Below are positions 1 to 48,406 of a DNA stretch of 64,000 nucleotides, one piece after another. The stretch spans positions 1 to 64,000 of the IMG/VR virus record IMGVR_UViG_3300050120_000361; one strand, 5' to 3'. Made by a program: the position numbers and the translations under genes. Position 1 is the first letter of the stretch. Each line of letters opens with the position of its first letter. Below the pieces are notes generated by a model. It made no database searches. It was not told the origin of the DNA and worked only from the letters and a program-made list of their open reading frames with translations.

Positions 1-127
1 TTTCCTGCAGGTATACTATCGCTTCCGAGGTGTGCAGCATCTCCATGTCGGCTTGCGTGAACTTCTCCTTTGTTCCGTTCCAGTGCTGCCATATCGCCAA
101 AAGGCATATAAGCTTTGTCGTTTCCAT
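1..127 (-). CDS. hypothetical protein, runs off window edge (METTKLICLL...)
   Basis: ATG at 127 after A-rich leader and cassette hairpin; frame open to position 1; not in ORF track. Confidence 0.65.
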   Translation of the reverse strand, partial: METTKLICLLAIWQHWNGTKEKFTQADMEMLHTSEAIVYLQE

Positions 128-142
128 AAATTAAATGTGTTT

Positions 143-180
143 GATACCCATTAAAGGCCGACACTCACGCGCCGGCCTGC
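143..180 (-). promoter_or_regulatory. cassette hairpin + linker
   Basis: AGGCCG...CGGCCT stem followed on sense strand by TTTAATGGGTATC and A-rich leader. Confidence 0.55.
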
Positions 181-196
181 ATTAATCAATTTTCGG

Positions 197-496
197 TTAC
201 CCCCACTGGACTACGTAACCGCATCTCGAGCAAGACCACCCGTGCGACCCGTTTGGCCTTTCGAAGTATTCGGGACTCACGTGCTCTGCCATGTCCGCGT
301 CATCGCCACAGCACTCGCGTATCTCATTCAATTGTTGCTGTGTGTTCATTTCAGGTATCGGCATGAAACTGTCCATGCCCCGGACCTTGTCGACATTGTT
401 AGCCGAAAGGAATTTGGCGAACTCCTGAAGCTCTTCATCCGTAGCTACTATCGCATGCTCCATTCCGCCGCGCCTTCCGTAACCCCTACTGCTCAT
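197..496 (-). CDS. hypothetical protein with C-terminal CxxC zinc-ribbon-like motif
   Basis: 99 aa ORF; GWSCSRCG; start could be 463. Confidence 0.7.
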   Translation of the reverse strand: MSSRGYGRRGGMEHAIVATDEELQEFAKFLSANNVDKVRGMDSFMPIPEMNTQQQLNEIRECCGDDADMAEHVSPEYFERPNGSHGWSCSRCGYVVQWG

Positions 497-1160
497 CGCT
501 CGTTTCCCCCTTTCTGTGTATTGGGTGCTCAGGGTCGAATATCGGCTTCCACCACGCGAGCGGCATGCACTCGTTGGCCCATTTGAGCGCCGCCTTGTGG
601 GTGTTGCGCTCCCACATAGAAATCAGAAGGTTCGGGCAGTCATTGCGGCTGTCCCATTGGATGCTGTAGGCCGTGCGCGGGTCCTCGCCCTTCTGCTTGT
701 TCGCAAGCTCGGCCTCTATTTCTGTTATGGCGAGCCTCACGACAGCGGCGCACATGTCCTCGAAAAGCCCGCAAGCGTAAAGCCTTGCCTCGAGTTCCAT
801 ACGCACCGTTCTGCGCTGTTTGAGGATTGGATCCTTCTGTTCCGCACCGTCGCTGAAATGCGTCACCTTATCGAAGCCCTTGCAGGTCTCGTAGGCCTTG
901 ACGCATTCCTCAGCGGTTACGTAGTCTCCGAGCATTTCCATAACCCTTGAGCCTTCGCCGTCCCTGTGCGTCCACCTCGACAGGCCGAATGGCTTGTCCT
1001 CGTAAAGCGCGACGGACACCATGTAGGTTCCATCGATGTCAACTCCGGCGTCCGTCAGGTTGCCCTCGTCGAGCGGCGTAACCTCATTGGGGATTACCCC
1101 AATCTGCCAGAGCAGCCTCGCCACCCTGACCTCGTTCTTTAGTTCGTCTTCTATAAACAT
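486..1160 (-). CDS. hypothetical protein
   Basis: 224 aa ORF, A-rich leader, typical codon usage. Confidence 0.8.
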   Translation of the reverse strand: MFIEDELKNEVRVARLLWQIGVIPNEVTPLDEGNLTDAGVDIDGTYMVSVALYEDKPFGLSRWTHRDGEGSRVMEMLGDYVTAEECVKAYETCKGFDKVTHFSDGAEQKDPILKQRRTVRMELEARLYACGLFEDMCAAVVRLAITEIEAELANKQKGEDPRTAYSIQWDSRNDCPNLLISMWERNTHKAALKWANECMPLAWWKPIFDPEHPIHRKGETSDEQ

Positions 1161-1167
1161 GATTTTT

Positions 1168-1212
1168 GTTTCTTACCAATTAAAGCTCCACATCAATGAT
1201 GTGGAGCTTGTT
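1168..1212 (-). promoter_or_regulatory. cassette hairpin + linker
   Basis: AAGCTCCACATC/GATGTGGAGCTT stem then sense TAATTGGTAAGAAAC. Confidence 0.7.
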
Positions 1213-1222
1213 TCCATGCCTG

Positions 1223-1432
1223 TCAGGCGGACACGTACTCGGCGCTCTTTGCGGGGTCGCCGTAGAAGACTACCTGGTTCTTCAGGGAGTCCACTATCTG
1301 GACCACCTCATAGCCCACGCACGGAAGGGCCGCGAGCCCGGCGTCGACGGCCTTGTCGTGGCTGCTGTGGAAGTCCCCGAAGCCGCCCATAGGCTCTCCA
1401 GGGTTGAACTTGAATACCCAAAACCTTTTCAT
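1223..1432 (-). CDS. hypothetical protein
   Basis: 69 aa, ATGA-coupled to upstream gene. Confidence 0.75.
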   Translation of the reverse strand: MKRFWVFKFNPGEPMGGFGDFHSSHDKAVDAGLAALPCVGYEVVQIVDSLKNQVVFYGDPAKSAEYVSA

Positions 1433-1827
1433 AATTTCTTTTCGTTTATTGTTACAAGTCTACCAAGATTAACTCCTTTGTTAAGGTCTGCTGTCATGCC
1501 ACTCGTTACTGTGGTGTTACGCATTACCATTGCAACGCCGTATCTTTCAATTTCCTTGTAGTTAGCAATTCCAAAAAGTAGTACAGCAGTTGTCTTATCA
1601 GCGGCTTTGTCATAAGCTTCGCCAAAAGCCTTACAGAGCTTGGCGAGCTGTTCATCCACTTTGTCGCGAATGTGCGGTTTTGCGTACTTATTAAGCAGAA
1701 GCCATTCCTTGATTTTCCTGCTCTTATCGTCCTTGTTTAGCTCTTCCTTGAACTTTTCCTGGGCTTTATCCCAGTTAGCATCGGAAACCTTATGCTCCCT
1801 TCCGCTTATCAATATAATGTGGCTCAT
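1429..1827 (-). CDS. hypothetical protein
   Basis: 132 aa, ATGA overlaps both sides. Confidence 0.75.
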   Translation of the reverse strand: MSHIILISGREHKVSDANWDKAQEKFKEELNKDDKSRKIKEWLLLNKYAKPHIRDKVDEQLAKLCKAFGEAYDKAADKTTAVLLFGIANYKEIERYGVAMVMRNTTVTSGMTADLNKGVNLGRLVTINEKKL

Positions 1828-2117
1828 GACTCAAGCATTTTAATGTAACCCAAAGATAATGCTTTGTCGATAAGCGTGTCGCTTAGCATGTCCTTCACCT
1901 GCTCCTCAGTGGACCTTTTGAAGGTGTCCCTATGGTCCGTGTAGTCTCCGCCGTCCGGTGCGAGCCAAGCGAACTTGGTGCCCATAATCCCCTTAAAAGC
2001 CTCGTCAGACACGCACCACGCGCTCGAGGCGAAGCACCCCTTAACGGCAATTCCCAAGGCCTTATTATCCGTTGTCAGGACGAAGGGCTTGATGTCAATG
2101 ATTTCAAATTCTTTCAT
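1824..2117 (-). CDS. hypothetical protein
   Basis: 97 aa, cassette leader upstream. Confidence 0.75.
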   Translation of the reverse strand: MKEFEIIDIKPFVLTTDNKALGIAVKGCFASSAWCVSDEAFKGIMGTKFAWLAPDGGDYTDHRDTFKRSTEEQVKDMLSDTLIDKALSLGYIKMLES

Positions 2118-2132
2118 GATTTTTATTGTTTT

Positions 2133-2177
2133 TGTTTCTTACCAATCAAAGCCCAAGCGTCTCCGCCCGGGCTTTTT
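2133..2177 (-). promoter_or_regulatory. cassette hairpin + linker (contains 27-bp direct repeat copy 1)
   Basis: AAAGCCCAAGCGTCTCCGCCCGGGCTT at 2148-2174; sense linker TTTGATTGGTAAGAAAC. Confidence 0.7.
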
Positions 2178-2192
2178 GCTATTGGCTCGCCT

Positions 2193-2702
2193 TCAGTCGA
2201 GTATCTCTCCGAACAGCCATTCGCGCAGCTCCATCATCAGGTACTTCATTCCAATGTATGTATCTGCATTGAATTTTTGGTTTCTGTCTGGGTAGGGAAG
2301 TGGCTCGTTCTCAAGTACTGATTTAACGTTCCGAGACGCTTCAGAGTCTGTTAATTCGACTCTTTGGTCCCTCTCTATTTCGCAGTGCCTCATTCTGAGG
2401 TCCAGCCACCCTTTCAGGATTGTGACTTCCTTGCGCTCGAGAAGTATCTCATTATTCGCGCCCCACCTTAGCTCCATGTTCATTATGGATAGCTTTGAAA
2501 GGAGCCTGGTCTCGTCGTAGTTGTTGCCGTCCTCAGTTTCAAGCTTGATGGCGTGTCCAGCAATGAACTGGAATATTGAGAATTCTGAAAAGGAGAAAAT
2601 AGCTCCCTGATTGAACCTTACGAGCCGCCTGTCCTCGACGAAATCGTTCTTTTGTGCAACGAACCCGGTTTCGGGTATGTTGGCATGATTGTGTTTTTCC
2701 AT
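2193..2702 (-). CDS. hypothetical protein
   Basis: 169 aa; start moved to ATG 2702, just after cassette leader. Confidence 0.75.
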   Translation of the reverse strand: MEKHNHANIPETGFVAQKNDFVEDRRLVRFNQGAIFSFSEFSIFQFIAGHAIKLETEDGNNYDETRLLSKLSIMNMELRWGANNEILLERKEVTILKGWLDLRMRHCEIERDQRVELTDSEASRNVKSVLENEPLPYPDRNQKFNADTYIGMKYLMMELREWLFGEILD

Positions 2703-2709
2703 TTGTTTG

Positions 2710-2755
2710 TTTCTTTTATACCAATTAAAGCCCAAGCGTCTCCGCCCGGGCTTCT
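2710..2755 (-). promoter_or_regulatory. cassette hairpin + linker (27-bp direct repeat copy 2)
   Basis: identical 27-mer at 2727-2753; sense linker TTTAATTGGTATAAAAGAAAC. Confidence 0.7.
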
Positions 2756-2772
2756 TAAGAAACGAAACAAGC

Positions 2773-3135
2773 TCATGAAAGCTCGTCCCCTTCCGCTTCA
2801 ATTTCCTTGAACAGTTCGGCGTACATATGCGATGCACCCTCTTCCATATCGTATATGTTCCCTATCTGTTCTGTATAGTACTCGGTGTCGCTGAAGTCCA
2901 CAACGCTTTCCTTCCTGAACGCGCAGTCCCTGTTTACTTCAATGAACATCCGCTTCATACTCTTCGCATGCTCGTATATTTCCAGCACAATTCCCAATTC
3001 CTCGGGAGTGGCCGTTGAGCCGAATATGCTCTCCAATCTTTTCTGTTTGTGGAGGCGCGTAAGCCCCTTCACATTCTCCGACATGATGACCGTCATGATG
3101 TCGTGCTGCTTGAGCGTAAGTCCCGTTATCTTCAT
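2773..3135 (-). CDS. hypothetical protein
   Basis: 120 aa ORF. Confidence 0.75.
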   Translation of the reverse strand: MKITGLTLKQHDIMTVIMSENVKGLTRLHKQKRLESIFGSTATPEELGIVLEIYEHAKSMKRMFIEVNRDCAFRKESVVDFSDTEYYTEQIGNIYDMEEGASHMYAELFKEIEAEGDELS

Positions 3136-3149
3136 GTTCTTTCGTTTTG

Positions 3150-3191
3150 GTTTCCTACCAGTTCAGGCCCTGAGCGTTGAAGCTCAGGGCC
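3150..3191 (-). promoter_or_regulatory. cassette hairpin + linker
   Basis: GGCCCTGAGC/GCTCAGGGCC stem then sense TGAACTGGTAGGAAAC. Confidence 0.65.
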
Positions 3192-3221
3192 ATTCCTGTC
3201 AATCATACATATCCGATAATG

Positions 3222-4001
3222 TCAATCGTTATGGGCAATCCTCTCGATTTCGGGGTACTCGTTAGCCGTTATCCTGATAACCACGTCCCCGCACATGACA
3301 ATGAAGTGGGTGCCCTTGCGCACCAGCTCGAGCTCCGTGGTCTGCTTGAGCTTCATAAGCTTGGCTACCCTGATGCCGTCGTAGTACGCGAAGGACGCCA
3401 TGTGGCTCTCGCCGTCGTCCTCGTACAGCCAGACGTCGATTGTCTTTGGCTTCGTCTCCTTCAGCTCGTTGCGCTCGTCCAGTGCTGTTATGGTCGTTCC
3501 GAGCATGATGTTGAGGTCCGTGAGGGTGTTCCTGAAGTCACCGCTCGGAACGGCGTTTATCCATCGCTCGAGCCTTTCGCCGAATGCCCTGAGGGTTTCA
3601 ATTCCTATGTCCGTGCGCTCGGCGTCGCTTCTTACCTTGTCGGCGATGCGCTTCACGTCCGCGTCCCTGAACCTTACGAACCACTCCATTGCGTCCTCAA
3701 GGTACTTCTTCCTGTCGGACAGTTTTACGAAGTGGTAGGCGTCCAGAGTCACCTTGTCACCCAAGTTGGCCTTTATCTTATCCGATATTAGCATGAAGCC
3801 GTTTATCGCTGATACGTCCACCTTCACGTGCATTACGCCCTTTTCATCGAGTTCTCCCCAGTCCCACATCACGAGCATCCTGTCGAGGATTGTGTCGTGG
3901 TGTATAACCATTTCGGAGTTCTCATTAAGCCACCGGCACATTTCGCCGGTGTTGGAGAGCACCAGCTTGAGCTGGTGCTCTGTAGGTCTTTTGAGTTCCA
4001 T
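3222..4001 (-). CDS. hypothetical protein
   Basis: 259 aa ORF. Confidence 0.8.
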   Translation of the reverse strand: MELKRPTEHQLKLVLSNTGEMCRWLNENSEMVIHHDTILDRMLVMWDWGELDEKGVMHVKVDVSAINGFMLISDKIKANLGDKVTLDAYHFVKLSDRKKYLEDAMEWFVRFRDADVKRIADKVRSDAERTDIGIETLRAFGERLERWINAVPSGDFRNTLTDLNIMLGTTITALDERNELKETKPKTIDVWLYEDDGESHMASFAYYDGIRVAKLMKLKQTTELELVRKGTHFIVMCGDVVIRITANEYPEIERIAHND

Positions 4002-4011
4002 ATACTTGTTT

Positions 4012-4058
4012 TCGTTTTACACCAATTCAAGCCCGCACGGAGACGTGCGGGCTTTTAA
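4012..4058 (-). promoter_or_regulatory. cassette hairpin + linker
   Basis: AAGCCCGCACG/CGTGCGGGCTT stem then sense TGAATTGGTGTAAAACG. Confidence 0.7.
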
Positions 4059-4059
4059 A

Positions 4060-4488
4060 TTAGATTGTGTGCTGTTCCGTGAAGTCCTCAACGGCCTGCC
4101 ACACGGCCAGCGCGATTGACTCGGCCAGGTAGCCGCTCTCCACGTATTCCAAATTCTTTGGGTTGTCGACTCCCCAACTCCTTCCAAAGCCGGCGTAGCT
4201 TATGAAGTGCTCGCCTGGGGCTGTTGGGTGGTGCTCGAAGTTCACGTGGCATTCGGCGCTCACTGCTGGGACGCTTTTCCAGCAGTTCAGCTCGTATTCG
4301 GAGCCAGCGGTCTTGTTGCCCTTCACGAACATAATGAACTTTCTTGGATTGTCGCTTCCAATTGTGAACTCGAACGGTTTGGCGAACTTTCCCGATTTCC
4401 GGAGCTCTTCCACAGCTCCCTTGGCCGTCTTGGAGACATAGGCTATAAGCTTTTCCGCATCCTGTTTGGTTTTTTCTGCTTTGTCCAT
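4060..4488 (-). CDS. hypothetical protein
   Basis: 142 aa; start ATG 4488 after cassette leader. Confidence 0.75.
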   Translation of the reverse strand: MDKAEKTKQDAEKLIAYVSKTAKGAVEELRKSGKFAKPFEFTIGSDNPRKFIMFVKGNKTAGSEYELNCWKSVPAVSAECHVNFEHHPTAPGEHFISYAGFGRSWGVDNPKNLEYVESGYLAESIALAVWQAVEDFTEQHTI

Positions 4489-4495
4489 AAGTGTT

Positions 4496-4541
4496 GTTTC
4501 TTTAACCGTCAAAGGCCCATCGGTTAACCGATGGGCCTTTT
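4496..4541 (-). promoter_or_regulatory. cassette hairpin + linker
   Basis: near-perfect palindrome AAAGGCCCATCGGTTAACCGATGGGCCTTT then sense GACGGTTAAAGAAAC. Confidence 0.7.
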
Positions 4542-4543
4542 TA

Positions 4544-4786
4544 TTACCTTTCCCTGAATTTCACGTACTTATCGAGATGCACTCCTTTTGAAAGGTCCGA
4601 TATGAATTTTGTGGGTATTCCCGAAAGTTTGACAATCTTGGGCATCACGCCTATTTCAGACAGCTGCTTGGCATGCCTCAAACCGAACAGTATTACCTGT
4701 ATGGACTGTTCGTGGCGTTGGGCGTTGTTCCATGCGCCGTGGAGCTTCTCCGCAAGCGCCTGAATTTCCAATGGAATTACTTCCAT
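4544..4786 (-). CDS. small HTH-like protein
   Basis: 80 aa; ILFGLRHA...SGIP...KGVHLDKYV resembles a widespread small helical family (from recollection). Confidence 0.5.
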   Translation of the reverse strand: MEVIPLEIQALAEKLHGAWNNAQRHEQSIQVILFGLRHAKQLSEIGVMPKIVKLSGIPTKFISDLSKGVHLDKYVKFRER

Positions 4787-4788
4787 GG

Positions 4789-4923
4789 CTATTGAAGTCT
4801 TACGTGGTTTACTATCTCAACAGCTTCCATGCGCACAAGCGCCCTGTCTACGTCCTCAACCACCTTGTGCACAGGATAGTCGTCCTTGACTTCCACGCTA
4901 ATTTGAATTACAACCGTTTTCAT
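4789..4923 (-). CDS. hypothetical protein (44 aa, MKTVVIQISV...)
   Basis: read by hand; cassette leader upstream, stop 2 nt before next ATG. Confidence 0.65.
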   Translation of the reverse strand: MKTVVIQISVEVKDDYPVHKVVEDVDRALVRMEAVEIVNHVRLQ

Positions 4924-4933
4924 GATTTTTATG

Positions 4934-4980
4934 TTTCGTTTTAACCGTCAAAGGCCCAATGCTTGCGCACCGAGCCTATT
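4934..4980 (-). promoter_or_regulatory. cassette hairpin + linker (imperfect stem)
   Basis: shares TTTAACCGTCAAAGGCCCA with 4501-4519. Confidence 0.6.
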
Positions 4981-4990
4981 TTAAAATTCC

Positions 4991-5188
4991 TTAGTCTTTG
5001 TATTGTTCGAGTTTCTCCCTGAGCGCCGTGCGCCTCGCAAGGCTCTCAGACAGGGTAATGTTCGCCTTTATGCCGTCTTCTGAGGAAAGGTTTTCCTTCA
5101 TTTGGGCCTTGGTTTTCGTTATCGAAAGTGACAGCACATAGTGCATAAGGTCGATTTCTTCACTTTCCAATGGAATGCTTTTTGTCAT
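4991..5188 (-). CDS. hypothetical protein
   Basis: 65 aa ORF. Confidence 0.7.
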   Translation of the reverse strand: MTKSIPLESEEIDLMHYVLSLSITKTKAQMKENLSSEDGIKANITLSESLARRTALREKLEQYKD

Positions 5189-5199
5189 GATTTTTAGTG

Positions 5200-5250
5200 T
5201 TTCGTTTCTTACCTATTAATGCCCGATACACTTGCGCGTACCAGGCCTAC
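5200..5250 (-). promoter_or_regulatory. cassette hairpin + linker (degenerate)
   Basis: sense TTAATAGGTAAGAAAC after imperfect GC stem. Confidence 0.5.
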
Positions 5251-5254
5251 CTCA

Positions 5255-5650
5255 TTAATAGGTCCGTTTGTGGTTTTCCTTGAGGTATGCTATGACCTCT
5301 TCGAAAGTGCCTATCAGGACGGGCATTTTGCGTAGGTTGTTCACGTCGCATGCGGAACTGTCTCCCGTATATGTTCCGATATAAACCTCAAAGCCTTTCG
5401 CGTATACGCAAATCTGTCCCTCATTTCCGCCAAGAGACACGTCTATTGAGTGTTCGGAAGTTCTTCCGACATCCTCGAAACCCTCATCGTAGAACTTTTT
5501 GCGAAGCTCATCCGTGAATTTTTTCGAAGCACCTGTGAGCTTTTCTATATTCTCTTTGGTATCGTATTGCGGATAGTATTCCCATGCGCGTCTTTCCTGC
5601 ATGCGGTTCCATCCATTTTCTCGACTTTCGTCAAATGGCACTACTTTCAT
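5255..5650 (-). CDS. hypothetical protein, first gene of cassette array
   Basis: 131 aa; ATG 5650 lies just downstream of promoter motif. Confidence 0.75.
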   Translation of the reverse strand: MKVVPFDESRENGWNRMQERRAWEYYPQYDTKENIEKLTGASKKFTDELRKKFYDEGFEDVGRTSEHSIDVSLGGNEGQICVYAKGFEVYIGTYTGDSSACDVNNLRKMPVLIGTFEEVIAYLKENHKRTY

Positions 5651-5677
5651 GATTTGTCTTGTTTTCTTATATTGTAC

Positions 5678-5705
5678 ATATCCCATAAACGTCCGTATTA
5701 TAGGG
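5678..5705 (-). promoter_or_regulatory. phage promoter-like motif
   Basis: CCCTATAA-N13-GGGATAT. Confidence 0.75.
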
Positions 5706-5737: not shown

Positions 5738-6023
5738 GCGCACCGGTGCAACGGGCCTTTTTGACGGCACGCCTTGGCAAATGGCTTGGAATATCCCGAA
5801 AGTACCGTATTATTGCGTATTTTCCGGTGCGCCGGGTTGTTGCTCCCCATGGCTCGGGTGCGTCGAATTGAATGCCCGTAATGTATGGGTTTCAGTGGGA
5901 TATGCCATGTTTTGGGAACCTTTCAATTGTGCGCACCGGATATGGAGGCCATTCGGCCGTTATCCTTGGCAAATGCCTTTGCGGTTTTGTGGGAACCCCT
6001 TATTGTGGCATTGTCCGGTGCGC
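5738..6023. repeat. five-site inverted-repeat module A
   Basis: GCGCACCGG 5738, CCGGTGCGC 5824, CGGGTGCGT 5855, GCGCACCGG 5931, CCGGTGCGC 6015 (spacing 86/31/76/84). Confidence 0.9.
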
Positions 6024-6074
6024 ATTGGCGGAACGGGCAATAGAAAAGTCCCAATTGGGACTTGAATGCGAATG

Positions 6075-6227
6075 CTATTTAACTGTCAAATGGAACACCG
6101 CCCTGCAAACCTCCTTGATATGGAACATGTCATGCTCGTGCAAATCAATGGACAAATAGCCGAATGTTAGGGAAACGATGATTTCGAAAAGGGATTTAGT
6201 TGTTTGTTTCTTGATTAGTTTCTGCAT
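6075..6227 (-). CDS. hypothetical protein (50 aa, MQKLIKKQTT...)
   Basis: read by hand; has its own promoter motif at 6277-6303. Confidence 0.6.
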   Translation of the reverse strand: MQKLIKKQTTKSLFEIIVSLTFGYLSIDLHEHDMFHIKEVCRAVFHLTVK

Positions 6228-6276
6228 GACGTTTGGGTTTTAGTTTATGATAAATGATTGTTTTCTTATATCATTT

Positions 6277-6303
6277 ATATCCTGAAACTCCAAACATTAT
6301 AAG
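6277..6303 (-). promoter_or_regulatory. phage promoter-like motif
   Basis: CTTATAA-N13-AGGATAT. Confidence 0.7.
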
Positions 6304-6354
6304 ATAATCGAGCATTATCCGCAATATATGCCCAATACCTTATTGCACAACTGC

Positions 6355-6448
6355 GCGCACCGGATACGGGACCAAAACAGGGGCTGTCCTTGACTAATGC
6401 CTTGCCAAACAGTTTGGCCTGCATTCTGACGATAAGTTTCCGGTGCGC
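6355..6448. repeat. single 94-bp inverted-repeat unit
   Basis: GCGCACCGG 6355, CCGGTGCGC 6440 (spacing 85); central AATGCCTTGCCAAAC. Confidence 0.9.
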
Positions 6449-6468
6449 ATGCGGCCTATGGGCAAAAT

Positions 6469-6501
6469 AAAAGGGTCACCGAACTCGCTTCGGGACCCTT
6501 T
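6469..6501 (-). terminator. intrinsic terminator of 126-aa gene
   Basis: AAAGGGTC...GACCCTTT stem with sense-strand U tract. Confidence 0.65.
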
Positions 6502-6545
6502 CAACCTAAACCTTATCACAATCTGCGGCGGTTGCCGCATTCTCT

Positions 6546-6926
6546 TTATGCTACGACCAATTCGGCTTTTGCGGCTTTGGCTTTCGCCTTTGAAGCGCGG
6601 CTTGCCTTGTTGCGGGCCAAACGTGCTTTCTTTTCTTCAGGAGTTTCAACTTTTGCAACTGTTTCGATAACTTCAACCTTGTGGGTTACGGGAACGATTT
6701 TCGCAAGCATTGCGTCCTTAACGCTGTTGGTTGCGGCTTCGATGAACAGGCCCTTGAAAACAGGCAGTTCGATAACGTCTTCTGAACCAGCTTCGATACG
6801 GTCAGCGATTTCGAATGCAACGTCTTTTTTGATGCTCAAACGTTTTGCGGTTGCAACTACGAAGTTTAATTTTGCGCCGAATGATTTAGTTGAATACAAT
6901 GCGGCTGATTTGAATGATGCTTTCAT
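6546..6926 (-). CDS. small protein with Lys/Ala-rich C-terminal tail (putative DNA-binding)
   Basis: 126 aa; tail KKARLARNKASRASKAKAKAAKA; monocistronic. Confidence 0.7.
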   Translation of the reverse strand: MKASFKSAALYSTKSFGAKLNFVVATAKRLSIKKDVAFEIADRIEAGSEDVIELPVFKGLFIEAATNSVKDAMLAKIVPVTHKVEVIETVAKVETPEEKKARLARNKASRASKAKAKAAKAELVVA

Positions 6927-6979
6927 GATTTTAATTTTTTAAGTTTGTTTAAATAATTTGTTTGTTTCTTATGATAATT

Positions 6980-7007
6980 ATATCCTGAAAACCCAAACAA
7001 TATAGGG
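6980..7007 (-). promoter_or_regulatory. phage promoter-like motif
   Basis: CCCTATAT-N13-AGGATAT. Confidence 0.75.
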
Positions 7008-7041
7008 AATACGGGAAAATAGTTCATATAGTTATGCTTAC

Positions 7042-7329
7042 GCGCACCGGTACATCATGAATTATTGGTTGTATGCAGGGCATTTGGCAACCAATCCCGA
7101 ATACATGGCCTTTTCTGTTCCCAATACCGGTGCGTACGGTTGCGTACCAATAAGGTACTGGTGCGCGCGGTTGTATCGATTATTCAATGGGAATATCGGG
7201 CATTGCATGGCAAACGGAAACCAATTGCGTTCCATGCGCACCAGACAGTCATTGAATATCTGCCATTGACAAGGCATTATGCCTGATGGTTCCAATACGG
7301 TCCCAATACGGTCAACAGTGCCGGTGCGC
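7042..7329. repeat. five-site inverted-repeat module B
   Basis: sites at 7042(R), 7127(L), 7158(L), 7236(R), 7321(L); spacing 85/31/78/85. Confidence 0.9.
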
Positions 7330-7347
7330 GCGAACGGCCGTATACAG

Positions 7348-7372
7348 AAAAAGCCCGACTTTCGTCGGGCTT
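7348..7372 (-). terminator. intrinsic terminator of 253-aa gene
   Basis: AAGCCCGAC-TTTC-GTCGGGCTT with sense-strand U tract. Confidence 0.75.
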
Positions 7373-7403
7373 AATCTTCATTAGTCAGTTAATTGTTTCT
7401 TTA

Positions 7404-8165
7404 TTACAACGCCTCGATTGCAACGGTTTGCTTAACCGAAAGAGGGATAAGGTATGCCTTCAATGAAGCGTTGCCGTCATTGGCATCCTTGAATTTGATT
7501 TTGGCCTCTTCGAAAGCCGCAACGGGAACGTCGTATATTTCGCCGTCGATTTGCAGCGGTTTTGTAACGACTTTGGTAGATAGCGGTTTGCGGGGTTTGT
7601 AGTAGGTTTTGGCGTAGCGTATACGGTCAATACCTGTTTGCATTTCGGCGATGATGTCAACCTCTTTGGCAAGTTCAACTTGCATGTAGACATCGGCAGC
7701 GTAGCCCTTAGCAGCGGCCTCGTCGTCAATCATTTTCTTGATTGCTGTACGGGCGGGCTTAACTTCCCACCATGAAGACAACAGCAACAGGAGAGGATTG
7801 ATTGATTGGCCTGCAATCTGAATGGTTGAGATAACCTTCAAACCGTCCAAAATCTTAGGCTCGCGCTCTTTGTCGTATTTGGACGATGCAACGGTCTCGT
7901 TGATATAGTCCAATGGGCTGTGAGCTTCCAACCATTCGCGGTCCGTGAACTGCGGAGTGTTTTCATCAACAACGTGCATTGACAAATTGCCTTGCGCGGC
8001 GTCTTCCAGGTCATTTCCAAGCTCGGGGTCAGCGGCGCCAGCGTTTGGCTGTTCGTTCTGAGCTCCTTCGTTTTGCTCGTTTTGTGCGCCTTCTTTGTTG
8101 GCTGCTACTGATTGGTTTTGTTGTGCTTTAGCGGCTTTTTCAGCGGCTCTGTTTTTGTTTGACAT
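7404..8165 (-). CDS. early paralogue-family protein (253 aa), acidic/disordered N-terminus
   Basis: C-terminal half aligns with 11584-12150 and 12210-12524. Confidence 0.8.
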   Translation of the reverse strand: MSNKNRAAEKAAKAQQNQSVAANKEGAQNEQNEGAQNEQPNAGAADPELGNDLEDAAQGNLSMHVVDENTPQFTDREWLEAHSPLDYINETVASSKYDKEREPKILDGLKVISTIQIAGQSINPLLLLLSSWWEVKPARTAIKKMIDDEAAAKGYAADVYMQVELAKEVDIIAEMQTGIDRIRYAKTYYKPRKPLSTKVVTKPLQIDGEIYDVPVAAFEEAKIKFKDANDGNASLKAYLIPLSVKQTVAIEAL

Positions 8166-8206
8166 GACTTTAATTTTTGGATTGATTAATTTGTTTCTTA
8201 TTTACT

Positions 8207-8235
8207 GTATCCCAAAAATGATGGAATTATAAGGG
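8207..8235 (-). promoter_or_regulatory. phage promoter-like motif
   Basis: CCCTTATAA-N13-GGGATAC. Confidence 0.7.
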
Positions 8236-8299
8236 ATTTGGAAAGTTTTTTCGTTTTGTTTTCGTTTAGATGTTCAAATCCTCATCGCTTATATTATAT

Positions 8300-8326
8300 A
8301 TATCCCAAAAAACGTTATTATATAGG
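8300..8326 (-). promoter_or_regulatory. phage promoter-like motif (tandem with 8207)
   Basis: CCTATAT-N13-GGGATAT. Confidence 0.75.
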
Positions 8327-8369
8327 AATATCGGAAACTTTGTGCTAATAGGCAGTTATGGACAGTCGC

Positions 8370-8657
8370 GCGCACCGGTTATTCGGCATATTTTAAGGTT
8401 GTGCAAGGCATTTATCCTCATGGCTTTCCTACACGGCATTCAATAAATAGTGTTCCGGTGCGCTTGGATGTTATAGTCTTTGCGGGCCGGTGCGCCGGGT
8501 TGAGCCTCCAAAACTGAAAAAGCCCCTGTTTCCCAAGCATTTTTGGCATACCGACAGCATCTATGCGCACCGGATATTATCCGATAATCCAGAAACCGTT
8601 GGCATTCATCAGGGCTTTAACAGTATTCGGAGGCTTCCGCAGGATTGTCCGGTGCGC
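8370..8657. repeat. five-site inverted-repeat module C
   Basis: sites at 8370(R), 8455(L), 8487(L), 8565(R), 8649(L); spacing 85/32/78/84. Confidence 0.9.
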
Positions 8658-8670
8658 ACAGCACAACAAA

Positions 8671-8699
8671 CCCTATAAGTATTGGCGTCCAACGGATAT
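8671..8699 (+). promoter_or_regulatory. phage promoter-like motif
   Basis: CCCTATAA-N14-CGGATAT, 13 bp from module C. Confidence 0.7.
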
Positions 8700-8722
8700 A
8701 ATTTCTGTTAAAACTTACGAAC

Positions 8723-8947
8723 ATGCAACAGCACACAACCTCAGAACTAATCGACCATTTGGCCCATATCATATATGATTTGGGATGGCCCATAGTAATA
8801 CCAATAATCATACTCGCTCTGGTGCTGATGGCTCTGGTGCGCGTACTGAGATTGATATTCAAAATCCCTATATTAACATGGATTTTCGGATATATAATAT
8901 ACAAGAGAACATCAAACAAAGACAAACAACCAAAATGGAAACAATAA
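8723..8947 (+). CDS. small membrane protein
   Basis: 74 aa, long hydrophobic stretch then basic tail. Confidence 0.65.
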   Translation: MQQHTTSELIDHLAHIIYDLGWPIVIPIIILALVLMALVRVLRLIFKIPILTWIFGYIIYKRTSNKDKQPKWKQ

Positions 8948-9180
8948 CCAAAATCGTAGACGGTCTGAAAGGCCAGCCAATCTACATACAAGCAGCAGCA
9001 ATCCTTTTCGCATTAGCGTTGGGACTTTTCATCGGATTGCTGCCAAAAGTGATACTCGTTGACATCATGGGATTGCCGTTCAATCCACCAAAACTGAAAT
9101 TCTTAGGGGCCAACAGAGCCCCTAAAATTTTGCCTGTTCGGAGCGTGCGCACCAGCGCACGCTCCCAGAGCATCGTGTAA
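8935..9180 (+). CDS. small membrane protein
   Basis: 81 aa from ATG 8935; one or two hydrophobic segments. Confidence 0.6.
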   Translation: METITKIVDGLKGQPIYIQAAAILFALALGLFIGLLPKVILVDIMGLPFNPPKLKFLGANRAPKILPVRSVRTSARSQSIV

Positions 9181-9238
9181 TTAAATTGCCTTGGCAAACG
9201 CCCGCAAATACGGCAATAATTGGAAATGCCCGGTGCGC
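9147..9238. repeat. single 92-bp inverted-repeat unit
   Basis: GCGCACCAG 9147, CCGGTGCGC 9230; central TTGCCTTGGCAAAC; left arm inside hairpin GAGCGTGCGC/GCGCACGCTC. Confidence 0.85.
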
Positions 9239-9253
9239 GTGAATGTCTTAAAT

Positions 9254-9281
9254 CCCTATCTTTTCGGCTTGCATGGGATAT
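9254..9281 (+). promoter_or_regulatory. phage promoter-like motif
   Basis: CCCTATCT-N13-GGGATAT. Confidence 0.7.
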
Positions 9282-9306
9282 AGGAAACTAAGAAACATAC
9301 AATAAC

Positions 9307-9998: not shown

Positions 9999-10075
9999 AA
10001 TTGTGAAAATGACGGTAGACGCGATAGTCGTGGTCATACGTACGCTTTAAGACATGTTTTCTTATGTGTTGTCAA

Positions 10076-10120
10076 ATGCCTGCTGGTTAAAATCAGCGGG
10101 CTTTGTCCGTTAAAAAACAA
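10076..10120 (+). promoter_or_regulatory. cassette hairpin + linker
   Basis: GCCTGCTG/CAGCGGGC stem then TTTGTCCGTTAAAAAAC, like the 4496 element. Confidence 0.6.
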
Positions 10121-10129
10121 ACCATTAAA

Positions 10130-10651
10130 ATGAAAAAGACAAGACCATCGCACTTCACGAATTACCCGTGGAGCAGCGTAAAGCAGAAATCCGAATGGGA
10201 GTCGATAGCGCAGAACATCATGAGAGTGATGTCAGAGCACGGCAACGACTTCTCGATAGGCCTCAGCCTGGAACAGTACACCGCCTACAGGGAAAAGGAG
10301 GGCGGTTCGGTGCGCATCTCCCAAGAGAGTTTTGATGAACTTATGGAGTACTGCAAAAGCGCTGAAACGGCTAAGCTGTTCAGTAAGGACTGGAAAGACG
10401 GCGTGCACATGGAAGTATTCGGCAACGACGAAAAGACCTCCAATGAAGACCATAACTCTCGCGAGATAAGCGTTGTAATGACTGTTGGGAACCGCGGGCT
10501 CATTGAAGCCGCCTTGAACCATTACTGGAACGACGCCAACGCCAACCTGCAGCGCAGCGACCTGGGCGACCTTGAGCGCTTTATGTACGAAAAGACCAAG
10601 ACATCCACAAAGGAATTGCTAATGGTTATTGACCTAAACTGGTACCTGTAA
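10130..10651 (+). CDS. hypothetical protein
   Basis: 173 aa from ATG 10130; HFTNYPWSSV motif. Confidence 0.75.
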   Translation: MKKTRPSHFTNYPWSSVKQKSEWESIAQNIMRVMSEHGNDFSIGLSLEQYTAYREKEGGSVRISQESFDELMEYCKSAETAKLFSKDWKDGVHMEVFGNDEKTSNEDHNSREISVVMTVGNRGLIEAALNHYWNDANANLQRSDLGDLERFMYEKTKTSTKELLMVIDLNWYL

Positions 10652-11583: not shown

Positions 11584-12150
11584 TTACAATACCTCTACGC
11601 CTTCGTTCTTTTTGGTGTTCGGGTCTGCTAACAATGCAGCGCGTTTCGAAGCTGCGTCCATACCTGACAGTGATGCCAAGAAGTCTGCCGATACTTCGTA
11701 AAGGTCGCCGCTGATGCTTACCTGGATCAGTTTTGTTTTCGCGGTTGTTGCGCGACGGGCGTAGAATGATTTTACGTTGTTCAGCGTTGAAGCCGCTTTC
11801 TGCAAGCCATTGATAACTGCCAATTCTGTTTGGAAGTCGCCGTCGATGTAATTTTTGAACTCTTCCGAACCGCCGAAGCTTTCGATAACCGAAGCCTTAA
11901 CCGGAGCTGAAGCGTCTTTGTCATGCCATACCGGCACCAGGCTCAATACCTTCGCGAAGTTAGCGCTAACGCCGAACTCGTTGATTTTGGCAACTGCAGC
12001 TGTAAGGCCGGCAATTTCTTCAGGGGTTAATTCTTTCGGCTCTTTTGAGCTTTTCTTGGTTTCAGTACCTTCAGCCGGTGCTGTTGAAGTTTCCAAATCG
12101 GAAACGTTTAATTCCTGGTCTTCAGCAGGAGATTGTGCGTCGTTTGACAT
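11584..12150 (-). CDS. early paralogue-family protein (188 aa)
   Basis: aligns with 7404-8165. Confidence 0.8.
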   Translation of the reverse strand: MSNDAQSPAEDQELNVSDLETSTAPAEGTETKKSSKEPKELTPEEIAGLTAAVAKINEFGVSANFAKVLSLVPVWHDKDASAPVKASVIESFGGSEEFKNYIDGDFQTELAVINGLQKAASTLNNVKSFYARRATTAKTKLIQVSISGDLYEVSADFLASLSGMDAASKRAALLADPNTKKNEGVEVL

Positions 12151-12524: not shown

Positions 12525-12578
12525 ATACAGGCCTCCTTACTTTCTCATGTTTTAATATGTTTTTCTCTTATGATTATA

Positions 12579-12606
12579 TTATCCTTGAAAAGGAATTAAT
12601 ATAGGG
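12579..12606 (-). promoter_or_regulatory. phage promoter-like motif
   Basis: CCCTATAT-N13-AGGATAA. Confidence 0.7.
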
Positions 12607-12690
12607 AGAATAGGGCAAAATGGCAAACTATTTTAAAATTGTCTTTGGACTGGATTTGCGTGGTATCGGGTCGGATATAGGCCGGACAGT

Positions 12691-15703: not shown

Positions 15704-15730
15704 GATTTTTATGATTTATCGTTGCTCCAC

Positions 15731-15758
15731 ATATCCCATGGGATATGGTGTTATAGGG
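15731..15758 (-). promoter_or_regulatory. phage promoter-like motif
   Basis: CCCTATAA-N13-GGGATAT. Confidence 0.8.
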
Positions 15759-15951
15759 CATCATTGCCCGTGCGTTTATCCCAAGGTAGTGAGCTTGTAA
15801 GCAACGTCAAAGCGCAAAAGGACAGTACGAATATTGCGGTATTGGTCTGAACATCATTAAATGGCGTCCAATCCCTTGAGTAGTGGAAGTACCACAGCAG
15901 CAGTATGTCAAGCAGTCACCCTACGCCAAAACCAAATGAATTCCATTTCAT
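15751..15951 (-). pseudogene. small membrane protein interrupted by in-frame TGA
   Basis: MKWNSFGFGVG*LLDILLLWYF...NDAL; TGA at 15916-15918; fills the whole gap. Confidence 0.55.
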
Positions 15952-22399: not shown

Positions 22400-22427
22400 G
22401 GCTGTTTTGTTTTATTCGATAGATAAC

Positions 22428-22454
22428 ATATCCTGCGGAGCGGATATTTATAGG
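22428..22454 (-). promoter_or_regulatory. phage promoter-like motif
   Basis: CCTATAA-N13-AGGATAT. Confidence 0.8.
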
Positions 22455-22520
22455 CTTTCTAACGCAACTCGCACGATTATTTCTAACATGCGGGCCGCGT
22501 CAGTTTTATGGCGCATGGTA

Positions 22521-31255: not shown

Positions 31256-31284
31256 GTTCAATCGTGTTTTTTGTTGTAAATGAA

Positions 31285-31311
31285 ATATCCCGCAGACCAT
31301 GTAGTTATAGG
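31285..31311 (-). promoter_or_regulatory. phage promoter-like motif overlapped by an inverted repeat
   Basis: CCTATAA-N13-GGGATAT; CCCGCAGACC/GGTCTGCGGG arms. Confidence 0.75.
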
Positions 31312-31353
31312 TCTGCGGGACAGTTTCGGCCCTAAAGTTGCTAACGCCGGGCG

Positions 31354-40238: not shown

Positions 40239-40802
40239 TTATTTCAATAGGTGCTTTGATGGGTCGACGCGGAAGTCCCAGCCCCATTGGAGCATGGACT
40301 GACAGGCGCGCGGGTACAGTTCCCGAGCGTTTCCCATGGGTTCGCCGCGCCTTTCCATCTTATTGGCCAGCCCTTTCCATTGCCTGCTGACGAATGAACG
40401 GAACCTGTCTATCTGCCTCGCGTCGTCGTATGTGCGCCTGCCCGAATGGTAGTTGATGTACCACTGGTACCAGCCGTAAGGGTCCATTGGGTCGAGCAGT
40501 CCCTTGTCGCGCCACCAAAAGAAATCTAAACCAGCCCTTATGTGAAAGTGGTTCACTTTCTTGAAGTCTGGGCAGTTCCTCAGGTTCGGCCACGAAAGTA
40601 TTTCTGGGGTTTTGTCCGCCTGCCTGTCGAATTCCGTATTAGGAATAGCCTGCTCGTAAAAGTACCCGCCCCCAAAGACGCCCATAAGAGCCATCTCTTC
40701 AGGGGTGTGGCATGTGCTGAAGTATTCGCTGTACTTGTTCATATTTTGCTTATACCTGTAAAAGCCGGCGAAAGTTTCCGCCGGCTTGTTTTTGATTTTC
40801 AT
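40239..40802 (-). CDS. conserved hypothetical protein (family also seen in giant viruses and eukaryotes)
   Basis: TPEEM..GVFGG.YF, DPYGWYQWY..Y..GRR..DD.RQI.R. Confidence 0.6.
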   Translation of the reverse strand: MKIKNKPAETFAGFYRYKQNMNKYSEYFSTCHTPEEMALMGVFGGGYFYEQAIPNTEFDRQADKTPEILSWPNLRNCPDFKKVNHFHIRAGLDFFWWRDKGLLDPMDPYGWYQWYINYHSGRRTYDDARQIDRFRSFVSRQWKGLANKMERRGEPMGNARELYPRACQSMLQWGWDFRVDPSKHLLK

Positions 40803-40830
40803 GGATTTTTAAATTTGTTTATGAAATCCA

Positions 40831-40858
40831 CTATCCCGTGGGATGTTCCGTTATAGGG
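40831..40858 (-). promoter_or_regulatory. phage promoter-like motif
   Basis: CCCTATAA-N13-GGGATAG. Confidence 0.75.
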
Positions 40859-40874
40859 TATCGGATAATGTGCG

Positions 40875-48310: not shown

Positions 48311-48361
48311 CGCTTTTGGATTTTGTTGTTTATGGTTTTTGTTAGTTACTTATTAGTATTC

Positions 48362-48390
48362 ATATCCCATTGGGCTTTACGGTTATAGGG
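48362..48390 (-). promoter_or_regulatory. phage promoter-like motif
   Basis: CCCTATAA-N14-GGGATAT. Confidence 0.75.
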
Positions 48391-48406
48391 CGGCGGACCG
48401 CAAATT

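What the first reader, a model, noticed from the sequence alone, without database searches (positions are those of the whole stretch)
143..5250. Gene-cassette array: each gene block is preceded by a GC hairpin fused to a conserved TTTAATTGGTAAGAAAC-type linker
Seen: nine intergenic elements (143, 1168, 2133, 2710, 3150, 4012, 4496, 4934, 5200) plus one on the plus strand (10076). Each has a GC stem-loop, then TTT/TGA-(A/G)TTGGTAAGAAAC or TTTGACGGTTAAA, then an A-rich leader and ATG. The stems differ in sequence but usually begin with GCCC or GGCC, and the U tracts are too short for strong terminators. Only one promoter motif (5678) feeds the whole array. Inference: these are RNA processing or stabilising sites that cut one early polycistron into single-gene mRNAs (as RNase III sites do in the T7 early region), and/or homology anchors for shuffling accessory genes (as PeSL cassettes do in T4-like phages).
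Basis: partly seen in the sequence, partly recalled or inferred. Interest (0 to 1): 0.62.

Follow-up and report, generated by a model that had tools for sequence, protein, structure and literature searches.

The report
Hairpin-plus-leader junctions in a phage operon
The small early genes of an uncultured 208-kb peat phage are separated by a repeated two-part signal, an RNA hairpin followed by a fixed ribosome-loading leader, which most likely punctuates one long transcript; this is a variant of known phage intergenic signals, not a new kind of system.

Summary
All ten listed elements exist. A covariance model built from six of them recovers the rest. It also finds a further array copy beyond the window start and three or four copies elsewhere in the 208,538-bp phage genome.

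Each element has three parts:
- a stable GC hairpin of 9-11 bp, usually closed by a GNRA loop on the transcribed strand;
- a 9-nt U-rich spacer ending in an almost invariant GG;
- a leader of the TAAGAAAC type that places adenines at -14 to -11 from the ATG, the signature of Shine-Dalgarno-less Bacteroidota translation.

The same octamer follows this phage's own two-box promoters. The hairpins have weak U tracts: their terminator scores are -31 to +11, against +14 to +34 for five of the six operon-end terminators scored. The linker never occurs without a hairpin and holds no recognisable promoter.

My best reading (about 0.5) is intercistronic punctuation of one early operon. The operon is fed by the promoter at 5702-5677 and by an internal candidate at 3232-3208. 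The hairpin would act as a leaky terminator or RNA-end stabiliser, and the leader as a ribosome entry site.

RNase III-type processing is poorly supported, because only 2-4 elements have long duplexes. Shuffling is plausible but untested: no close relatives and no RNA data were found.

The parts
5677..5705 (-). Main promoter candidate of the array (two-box class P): first box with TATAAT at 5702-5697, second box GGGATATG at 5684-5677
   Evidence: Joint top PWM score, 27.6, in the genome; sequence read. About 27 nt upstream of the ATG at 5650.
5255..5650 (-). First gene of the array (131 aa, ORFan)
   Evidence: ORF list, called gene, no family
5204..5246 (-). E1: hairpin 5246-5221 (GNRA loop) plus linker 5220-5204; ATG at 5188
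   Evidence: E 7e-4; dG -17.2, d-score -30.9; 10-bp outer complementarity, 0 of 500 shuffles
4933..4976 (-). E2: hairpin 4976-4953 (GNRA loop) plus linker 4952-4933; ATG at 4923
   Evidence: (training set)
4496..4537 (-). E3: hairpin 4537-4514 plus linker 4513-4496; ATG at 4488
   Evidence: (dG -20.1, d +10.1); shares 19 identical nt with E2
4008..4052 (-). E4: hairpin 4052-4031 plus linker 4030-4008; ATG at 4001
3208..3232 (-). Internal promoter candidate (class P), overlapping the stop codon of gene 3222-4001; its second box ends 16 nt before hairpin E5
   Evidence: PWM score 19.2, not in the training set and the only hit inside the array; coordinates
3150..3191 (-). E5: hairpin 3191-3166 (6-nt loop) plus linker 3165-3150; ATG at 3135
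   Evidence: E 1.8e-3; dG -21.4, d -18.5
2709..2751 (-). E6: hairpin 2751-2730 (GNRA loop; identical to E7) plus linker 2729-2709; ATG at 2702. The complement of the leader lies just upstream (2752-2768).
   Evidence: (27 identical nt with E7)
2134..2172 (-). E7: hairpin 2172-2151 plus linker 2150-2134; ATG at 2117
   Evidence: (best hit, 64 bits)
1168..1207 (-). E8: hairpin 1207-1185 (3-nt loop) plus linker 1184-1168; ATG at 1160
   Evidence: (E 7.5e-7, not in the training set)
139..177 (-). E9: hairpin 177-156 (GNRA loop) plus linker 155-139; ATG at 127. The gene runs over the window start into the far end of the genome.
10078..10118 (+). E11: the same composite inside the small plus-strand operon (hairpin 10078-10101, linker 10102-10118, ATG at 10130)
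   Evidence: E 0.019; linker PWM 16.4
40738..40789 (-). E13: hairpin plus linker-like tail downstream of promoter candidate 40855. Ambiguous: it may lie inside the first 20 codons of gene 40239-40802.
   Evidence: (E 1.6e-5)
1..5188 (-). Remaining genes of the array in the window: 13 small genes in nine blocks (4991-5188, 4789-4923, 4544-4786, 4060-4488, 3222-4001, 2773-3135, 2193-2702, 1824-2117, 1429-1827, 1223-1432, 486-1160, 197-496, 2-127)
   Evidence: Ten were scanned against PHROGs and Pfam; only 4544-4786 and 1429-1827 match a Pfam family, PF24718 HTH_73, and 1223-1432 weakly matches one PHROG of unknown function. The 259-aa protein has no homologue beyond itself.

Best explanation
The elements are intercistronic junctions of one early, polycistronic array of about 21 small ORFan genes in a jumbo myovirus whose host probably belongs to the Bacteroidota.

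Each junction is read as RNA and has two working parts:
- Part 1 is a stable GC hairpin, often closed by a GNRA tetraloop, followed by a short interrupted U tract. It would act as a leaky intrinsic terminator (attenuator), and as a 3'-end or 5'-end protective stem on whatever RNA ends there.
- Part 2 starts exactly 9 nt after the stem. It is the phage's standard Shine-Dalgarno-less leader (TAAGAAAC type, then an A-rich run). It keeps the 24-33 nt before the ATG unstructured and puts adenines at -14 to -11, so ribosomes can load afresh on each gene block.

Transcription would enter mainly from the promoter at 5702-5677, with a booster candidate at 3232-3208.

Shown: the anatomy, the strand bias, the weak U tracts, the sharing of the leader octamer with promoter-proximal leaders, and the absence of free-standing linkers.

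Inferred: read-through, attenuation, stabilisation, ribosome loading, and the host phylum.
For: - Composite confirmed: the covariance model recovers all copies. Ten of about 14 copies lie in 7.8 kb of a 208.5-kb genome.
- Structure is selected but stem sequence is not: 94.8% of pair cells are canonical across 14 elements, and the inner pairs show 4-5 pair types each.
- RNA orientation: 8 of 13 tetraloops are GNRA on the transcribed strand, where about 1 in 32 is expected by chance (loops read).
- Weak terminators: d'Aubenton-Carafa-type scores are -31 to +11, against +14 to +34 for five of six operon-end terminators in the same genome; the sixth scores -1.1. The built-in terminator scan does not list them.
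- Leader: genome-wide adenine frequency peaks at 54-60% at -14 to -11, and only 17 of 242 genes have an SD-like motif. This matches the Flavobacterium johnsoniae initiation signature (PMC6847099).
- Octamer: TAAGAAAC occurs 10 times in the genome, 8 of them in the first 10 kb. Five copies follow a promoter's GGATAT box by 2-8 nt and three follow hairpins by 9 nt.
- Coupling: the linker PWM gives no hit above 16.1 without a preceding hairpin.
- No promoter inside: there is no -10-like box at a fixed distance. The A-rich block before the ATG is anchored to the ATG, not to the stem. There is no Bacteroidetes TTTG/TAnnTTTG pair, and no class-P score of 14 or more except at 3233.
- The region downstream of the stem is predicted unpaired in most elements.
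Against: - No RNA data exist for this phage, so read-through, 3' ends and ribosome loading are all inferred.
- The almost invariant GGT at +7 to +9 after the stem, and the fixed 13-nt distance from the last GGG(C) of the stem to the leader, are more conserved than a U tract or a generic A-rich leader needs. This suggests that a specific factor reads them.
- In two distant relatives the equivalent intergenic positions carry a real promoter after each terminator. By position, therefore, a promoter would be expected here.
- Ten leaky terminators in series would leave little transcript for the last genes unless each is very weak.
- The octamer is not above expectation in the relatives.
Confidence: 0.5

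Rival explanations
1. Terminator-promoter composites of the PeSL type. The hairpin ends the upstream transcript, and the linker (perhaps with the GGG(C)TTT end of the stem) is a compact promoter of a class not yet recognised. Each gene block would then be its own transcription unit.
For: - Relatives carry a promoter after each hairpin at the equivalent place. L062 has class-P boxes. L069 has canonical Bacteroidetes TTTG-N19-21-TAnnTTTG promoters.
- The end of the stem plus the U tract sits at the same distance (13-15 nt) from the leader octamer as the GGGATAT box does in true class-P promoters.
- About half of the linkers begin with TTTG, the Bacteroidetes -33 box.
- Degraded PeSLs that keep the stem and only the upstream box are described in PMC4122927.
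Against: - Only 24-33 nt separate the stem from the ATG, too little for a two-box promoter plus a leader.
- There is no first box (TATAAY), and no TAnnTTTG follows.
- The linker never stands alone, for example at the head of an operon.
- One element (E5) lies directly downstream of a class-P candidate, which would be redundant.
Confidence: 0.15
2. RNA processing sites. A host endoribonuclease cuts at or next to the hairpin (RNase III in the stem, or an RNase E/G/Y-type enzyme in the single-stranded U-rich spacer). This would yield monocistronic mRNAs with a 3' hairpin and a common 5' leader.
For: - The hairpins are RNA-oriented (GNRA loops).
- The conserved single-stranded spacer lies next to a stem.
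- Processed 5' ends would resemble the promoter-proximal leader that starts near the same octamer.
- E1 and E10 have significant outer pairing that gives duplexes of about 20 bp.
Against: - Seven to nine of eleven elements have only 9-11 bp stems, short for RNase III.
- The phage has no RNase III, RegA or RegB gene.
- No Rfam family matches.
- No RNA ends can be examined.
Confidence: 0.12
3. Operator array. The hairpin plus the invariant TT...GGT...AAAC stretch is the binding site of a phage or host protein that coordinately shuts off, or times, translation or elongation of the early genes. Models are T4 translational operators on RNA, and mycobacteriophage stoperators on DNA.
For: - Sequence-specific positions (GGT in 13-14 of 14 elements) exceed what a U tract or a leader needs.
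- The elements have one orientation and a strict register to the stem.
- Two array genes carry an HTH-like domain, PF24718.
- In E6 and E10 the leader can pair with an upstream complement.
Against: No candidate binder is identified. There is no RegA homologue. Copies also occur in late operons, where co-regulation with early genes is not expected.
Confidence: 0.1
4. Mainly evolutionary residue. The shared flank reflects spread of one junction by duplication and recombination (homology anchors for cassette gain and loss), with little sequence-specific function beyond a hairpin.
For: - Neighbouring elements are the most alike: E6/E7 share 27 identical nt and flank one gene, E2/E3 share 19 nt, and E7/E8 share 18 nt.
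- All array genes scanned are ORFans, as in hyperplastic regions.
Against: - Stems diverge while the linker stays conserved, the opposite of what plain duplication leaves.
- Three metagenomes show no deletion, insertion or joint at any element.
- Copies in unrelated late operons keep the same register.
Confidence: 0.08

Closest known systems
PeSL / PmSL composite terminator-promoter motifs of T4-like myoviruses (PMC2839356; PMC4122927)
   Same: A stem-loop lies immediately upstream of a conserved motif, a ribosome site and the start codon. The motif is repeated between small ORFan genes in a variable early region of a large myovirus. The stems vary while the flank is conserved. Direct repeats flank single genes.
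   Different: PeSLs contain a full -35/N17/-10 (or Mot-box) promoter and a Shine-Dalgarno site. Here no promoter boxes are found, the space is too short for one, and the ribosome site is an SD-less A-rich leader. Recombination at the elements is not documented here.
Intrinsic (factor-independent) terminators used as attenuators inside phage early operons
   Same: A GC-rich stem with a tetraloop is followed by Ts, sits just after stop codons (6-30 nt), and is oriented with transcription.
   Different: The U tract is only 3 Ts and then interrupted, so scores fall below those of this genome's own operon-end terminators. A strictly conserved non-U sequence follows.
RNase III processing sites of the T7 early region
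   Same: Hairpins lie between the genes of one early polycistronic transcript.
   Different: As I recall them, T7 sites are irregular duplexes of about 20 bp or more with an internal loop. Most stems here are 9-11 bp with no extension.
Start-associated sequences (SAS) and extended SAS of Cluster K mycobacteriophages (PMC3203893)
   Same: An asymmetric conserved motif lies just upstream of start codons of non-structural genes. It has one orientation, is often preceded by an inverted repeat, and is proposed to act in translation initiation.
   Different: The SAS is a 13-bp GC-rich motif that contains an SD core. The ESAS repeats are conserved in sequence and do not support RNA pairing. Here the stems pair but vary in sequence, and the motif is A-rich.
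Bacteroidia SD-less translation initiation regions (PMC6847099)
   Same: Adenines at -14 to -11, and A-rich unstructured sequence before the ATG.
   Different: That signature is a loose composition bias. Here a defined octamer and a fixed register to a hairpin are added.

Membership tests
PeSL (promoter-early stem-loop) | Stem-loop directly upstream of the conserved motif, in intergenic spaces of a variable region of small ORFs | tested here: met
   The array genes scanned have no functional assignment: two carry only the Pfam HTH_73 domain and one weakly matches an unknown-function PHROG.
PeSL (promoter-early stem-loop) | A host-type early promoter (-35, about 17 nt, -10) between the stem-loop and the ribosome site | tested here: not met
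   Only 24-33 nt separate stem and ATG. No box lies at a fixed distance from the stem. The sigma-70 scan lists only one weak hit, at E2. No TTTG/TAnnTTTG pair. No class-P match.
PeSL (promoter-early stem-loop) | Insertions, deletions or replacements between close relatives that map at the elements | tested here: inconclusive
   No close relative was found. Three metagenomes carry the same arrangement without joints.
Intrinsic terminator | Stable GC-rich stem-loop | tested here: met
   dG -13.5 to -21.4 kcal/mol for 22-26 nt hairpins
Intrinsic terminator | U-rich tract of about 7-9 nt directly after the stem | tested here: inconclusive
   T-tail scores are 1.0-3.2, against 2.8-5.1 for operon-end terminators. 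Combined d-scores are -31 to +11, against +14 to +34 for five of the six operon-end terminators scored; the sixth scores -1.1.
Intrinsic terminator | Transcript 3' ends at the U tract | not testable with these tools
   No RNA run holds the phage
T7-type RNase III site | Extended duplex of about two helical turns with an internal loop | tested here: not met
   Flank complementarity is beyond shuffles only for E1 and E10 (fraction 0.004 or less) and marginal for E6 and E7. The other seven are no better than shuffles.
Integron attC cassette array | Adjacent tyrosine-recombinase integrase | tested here: not met
   No PF00589 match in the whole genome, while all 14 control genomes matched
Integron attC cassette array | Conserved inverse-core and core sites at the two ends of an imperfect palindrome | tested here: not met
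   Only the 3' flank is conserved. The 5' flank has no shared motif.
Cluster K SAS/ESAS | The 13-bp SAS consensus a few nt before the start codon | tested here: not met
   The conserved block here has a different sequence and ends 7-18 nt before the ATG. The SAS definition is from PMC3203893.
Bacteroidia SD-less initiation region | Adenine enrichment at -14 to -11 and lack of SD | tested here: met
   for the whole genome. The leaders of E1-E8 place A at these positions.

The most novel reading that the evidence does not exclude
The hairpin, the invariant GGT and the leader octamer together form a cis-element that a dedicated factor reads. Two forms are possible. In one, it is a new hairpin-dependent promoter or re-initiation signal for a Bacteroidota RNA polymerase. 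In the other, it is a translational operator that lets one phage protein switch about twenty early ORFan genes off together. This would be a regulon defined by a structured RNA junction rather than by promoters.
Probability: 0.12. Interest if true: 0.7.

Novelty: new variant of a known kind. Interest (0 to 1): 0.4.

Why it matters
Little appears to be known about gene expression signals of phages that infect Shine-Dalgarno-less Bacteroidota. This array gives a compact natural part: a hairpin insulator joined to a leader. It could be tested as an expression or insulation module in Bacteroidota. It also suggests how PeSL-like junctions may look when the promoter is missing. Finally, it points to a phage-group-specific two-box promoter that is conserved from 24% to 53% GC. 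If the invariant positions turn out to be read by a factor, the array would be a simple model of coordinated post-transcriptional control of phage early genes.

Tried and rejected
- DNA similarity to 50,697 GenBank phage records: no match.
- Rfam at a permissive threshold: only sub-threshold chance hits.
- Exact 17-mer linker in IMG/VR: 34 hits, all single, none next to a hairpin, about the number expected by chance.
- Relatives through array or neighbouring proteins: none.
- Relatives through terminase, helicase and two conserved early proteins: only distant ones, 43-61% identity. The model R1 finds no convincing composite in them.
- The 180-kb record behind L049 and L069 could not be searched whole.
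- RNA evidence: no RNA run holds the phage. The three holders are DNA assemblies. They show only contig breaks at the palindromes, not variants.
- Sigma-70 reading of the linker (TTGAnn as -35): rejected. The A-rich block before the ATG keeps its distance to the ATG, not to the linker.
- Virion or phage RNA polymerase as reader of hairpin promoters (the N4 or crAss idea): no polymerase family or DxDGD motif found.
- Integron reading: no integrase.
- A general extended outer stem: true only for a minority of elements.
The check was redone from coordinates alone.

Full report
**What the window is.** The window is the first 64 kb of an IMG/VR virus record of 208,538 bp. The record has 52.9% GC and a 127-bp direct terminal repeat, so it is a circular assembly. 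PHROG matches to tail sheath, tail protein, portal, maturation protease, large terminase, topoisomerase II, helicase and NAD-ligase mark it as a jumbo myovirus. It comes from peat metagenomes and is present in three samples. Only 17 of 242 predicted genes have an SD-like motif. Adenine peaks at 54-60% at positions -14 to -11 before start codons. That is the signature described for Flavobacterium johnsoniae and other Bacteroidia (PMC6847099). A relative, L069, carries about a dozen canonical Bacteroidetes TTTG-N19-21-TAnnTTTG promoters. A Bacteroidota host is therefore likely, though inferred.

**Check of the observation.** All ten elements are present at the stated places. The genes of 1-5650 are all on the minus strand. 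Because the assembly is circular, the array runs on past position 1 to genome position 206352. It holds about 21 small genes in 11 blocks. There is one further element at 207612-207665, and a closing hairpin near 206340 that faces a convergent gene.

A covariance model was built from six elements with an 11-pair stem and run over the whole genome on both strands. Full-length hits:

| Element | Place | E-value |
|---|---|---|
| E8 | window 1159-1211, minus | 7.5e-7 |
| E13 | window 40738-40789, minus | 1.6e-5 |
| E12 | genome 173891-173942, plus | 4e-4 |
| E1 | window 5195-5250, minus | 7e-4 |
| E5 | window 3141-3194, minus | 1.8e-3 |
| E11 | window 10074-10127, plus | 0.019 |
| E10 | genome 207612-207665, minus | 1.2 |
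| E14 | genome 169494-169547, plus | 4 |

Hits on the opposite strand cover the palindromic stem only. Ten of about fourteen composites thus lie in 3.7% of the genome, always in the direction of transcription and always in front of a gene.

**Anatomy.** In the structure-aware alignment of 14 elements, 94.8% of pair cells are canonical. The four outer G-C pairs are nearly constant, and each of the five inner pairs shows four or five different pair types. After the stem come:
- TT (14 and 12 of 14 elements);
- four variable, mostly A/T, positions;
- GG (13 of 14 each) and T (14 of 14);
- an A-rich run ending in AAAC.

The ATG follows 24-33 nt after the stem (39 nt in E10). Eight of thirteen tetraloops are GNRA on the transcribed strand. 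By chance about one in 32 would be. This strand-specific bias indicates that the hairpins are selected as RNA.

**Are they terminators?** The hairpins are stable, at -13.5 to -21.4 kcal/mol. Their T tails are short and interrupted. On the d'Aubenton-Carafa type score they reach -31 to +11. Five of the six hairpins scored at operon ends in the same genome reach +14 to +34, and the sixth scores -1.1; the array's closing hairpin reaches +13.6. The built-in scan, which asks for five Ts in eight, does not list them. They sit 6-30 nt after the upstream stop codon. I read them as weak terminators or plain RNA stems. A promoter candidate whose second box ends 16 nt before hairpin E5 would make no sense in front of an efficient terminator. 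That point is an inference, because the promoter is only predicted.

**The linker splits in two.** Its 3' half is a leader.
- The octamer TAAGAAAC occurs ten times in the genome, against five expected, and eight of the ten lie in the first 10 kb.
- Five copies follow the GGATAT box of the phage's own promoters by 2-8 nt. Three follow array hairpins by exactly 9 nt.
- In the junctions the octamer and the A-run behind it place adenines at -14 to -11.
- The stretch after the stem is predicted unpaired in most elements.
- The octamer also occurs in leader position in two distant relatives, three times in all. There its count is not above expectation, so I give this little weight.

The 5' half (TTTRAYnGG) behaves as a short U tract plus GG. 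A PWM of the whole linker gives no hit above 16.1 anywhere in the genome unless a hairpin precedes it. The linker is therefore tied to the hairpin and is not a free-standing signal.

**Promoters.** A two-box motif (CCCTATAAY, then 12-13 nt, then GGGATATG) precedes many genes of the minus-strand early and replication region.
- A PWM from 16 instances gives about twenty hits at 18.6 or more. A shuffled genome gives six hits at 14 or more on one strand.
- The only hit inside the array is at 3232-3208 (19.2, not in the training set).
- The motif recurs in relatives of 24-27% GC, L062 and L068. It therefore belongs to the phage group.
- No phage RNA polymerase was found.
- Only a sub-threshold Sigma70_r2 match was found, at genome 180759-180926.

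**Relatives.** No close relative exists in the collections searched. Distant ones keep the gene order from the ligase to the homologue of 11584-12150. Two of them, L068 and L069, also hold a conserved 253-aa early protein, the homologue of window gene 7404-8165. Arrays of small co-directional genes then follow in L062 and L069.
- In L062 each block is preceded by a terminator hairpin, a two-box promoter and a short leader.
- In L069 each block is preceded by a terminator, an inverted-repeat element of about 107 bp and a host-type promoter.

The positional equivalents are thus PeSL-like terminator-promoter units. The phage studied here has the hairpin and the leader but nothing recognisable as the promoter. 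This keeps the promoter reading alive as a rival. It also suggests, as speculation, that the junctions derive from such units by loss of the promoter.

**Shuffling.** Neighbouring junctions are the most alike. E6 and E7 share 27 identical nt and flank the single gene 2193-2702. E2 and E3 share 19 nt, and E7 and E8 share 18 nt. Such direct repeats could mediate loss or gain of blocks, as shown for PeSLs (PMC4122927). However, contigs from three peat samples show no indel or joint. They show only assembly breaks at the palindromes and at the duplicated hairpin.

**Mechanism.**
- Most likely (0.5): one early operon is punctuated by hairpin-plus-leader junctions. The hairpin attenuates transcription and protects RNA ends. 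The leader reloads ribosomes on each block in a host that ignores SD sequences.
- Rivals: a compact unknown promoter (0.15), endonuclease processing sites (0.12), an operator for a regulator (0.10), and mainly recombinational residue (0.08).

The near-invariant GGT and the fixed register are not explained by the favoured model. They are the main reason for keeping the factor-binding readings open.

**Comparison and novelty.** The junctions work like PeSLs without the promoter, and like intrinsic attenuators with an attached leader. They fail the defining promoter feature of PeSLs, the long-duplex feature of T7 RNase III sites, and the integrase and core-site features of integron cassettes. They also differ in sequence and in pairing behaviour from the SAS/ESAS of Cluster K mycobacteriophages. 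I rate this a new variant of a known kind and of moderate interest. The regularity is striking. The likely function is ordinary, and nothing could be tested at the RNA level.

Noticed in passing
window 5677-5705, 6270-6305, 6975-7008, 8205-8328, 8674-8700 (+), 8869-8895 (+), 9257-9285 (+), 12575-12607, 15725-15759, 22425-22456, 31280-31313, 40825-40859, 48355-48391 and others: A two-box promoter-like motif (CCCTATAAY, 12-13 nt, GGGATATG) lies upstream of about twenty genes, mostly in the early and replication region. Several copies contain an inverted repeat that includes the second box. The same motif occurs in relatives of 24-27% GC (L062, L068). It matches no host promoter consensus that I know.
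   Followed up: partly
window 5739-9240: The gene-poor control region between the array and the plus-strand block holds about 16 copies of the 9-mer CCGGTGCGC on both strands. Six pairs are divergent and spaced 76-78 nt. Relative L069 has seven convergent pairs of a related 15-mer, 91 nt apart, in the intergenic spaces of its array. These could be iterons, regulator sites or a small inverted-repeat element.
   Followed up: partly
window 28620-30698 (-): A 692-aa protein carries a ribosome modulation factor domain (Pfam RMF, E 8e-23, residues 425-458). This is unusual inside a large phage protein and in a phage with a presumed Bacteroidota host.
   Followed up: no
window 4544-4786 and 1429-1827 (-): The only two Pfam-family-bearing array genes are distant paralogues with the HTH-like domain PF24718. 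They are possible regulators.
   Followed up: no
window 7404-8165 (-): A 253-aa protein with tandem promoters and its own strong terminator (7372-7351) is conserved at 43-56% identity in relatives of 24% and 41% GC. It has no family match and is the best marker gene next to the variable array.
   Followed up: partly
window 4958-4987, 2170 and 2724-2731: Public assemblies of the same phage break exactly at hairpin E2 and at the duplicated hairpin of E6 and E7. This is an assembly artefact of palindromes and repeats, not biological variation.
   Followed up: yes
window 2097-2131: A 5,174-bp contig of another organism in the source sample shares 30 of 35 nt with the leader and the first codons of gene 1824-2117. 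Its loose ends show no GC hairpin, so this is probably only A-rich leader similarity.
   Followed up: partly
genome 83063-83145 (-) and 99361-99432 (-); genome 180759-180926 (+): The phage carries tRNA-Leu(GAG) and tRNA-Gln(UUG) genes. A 121-aa ORF has a weak, sub-threshold Sigma70 region 2 match and may be a late sigma-like factor.
   Followed up: no
genome 124888-134010 (+): A 3,040-aa protein in the structural region has no Pfam or PHROG match and no DxDGD polymerase motif.
   Followed up: partly
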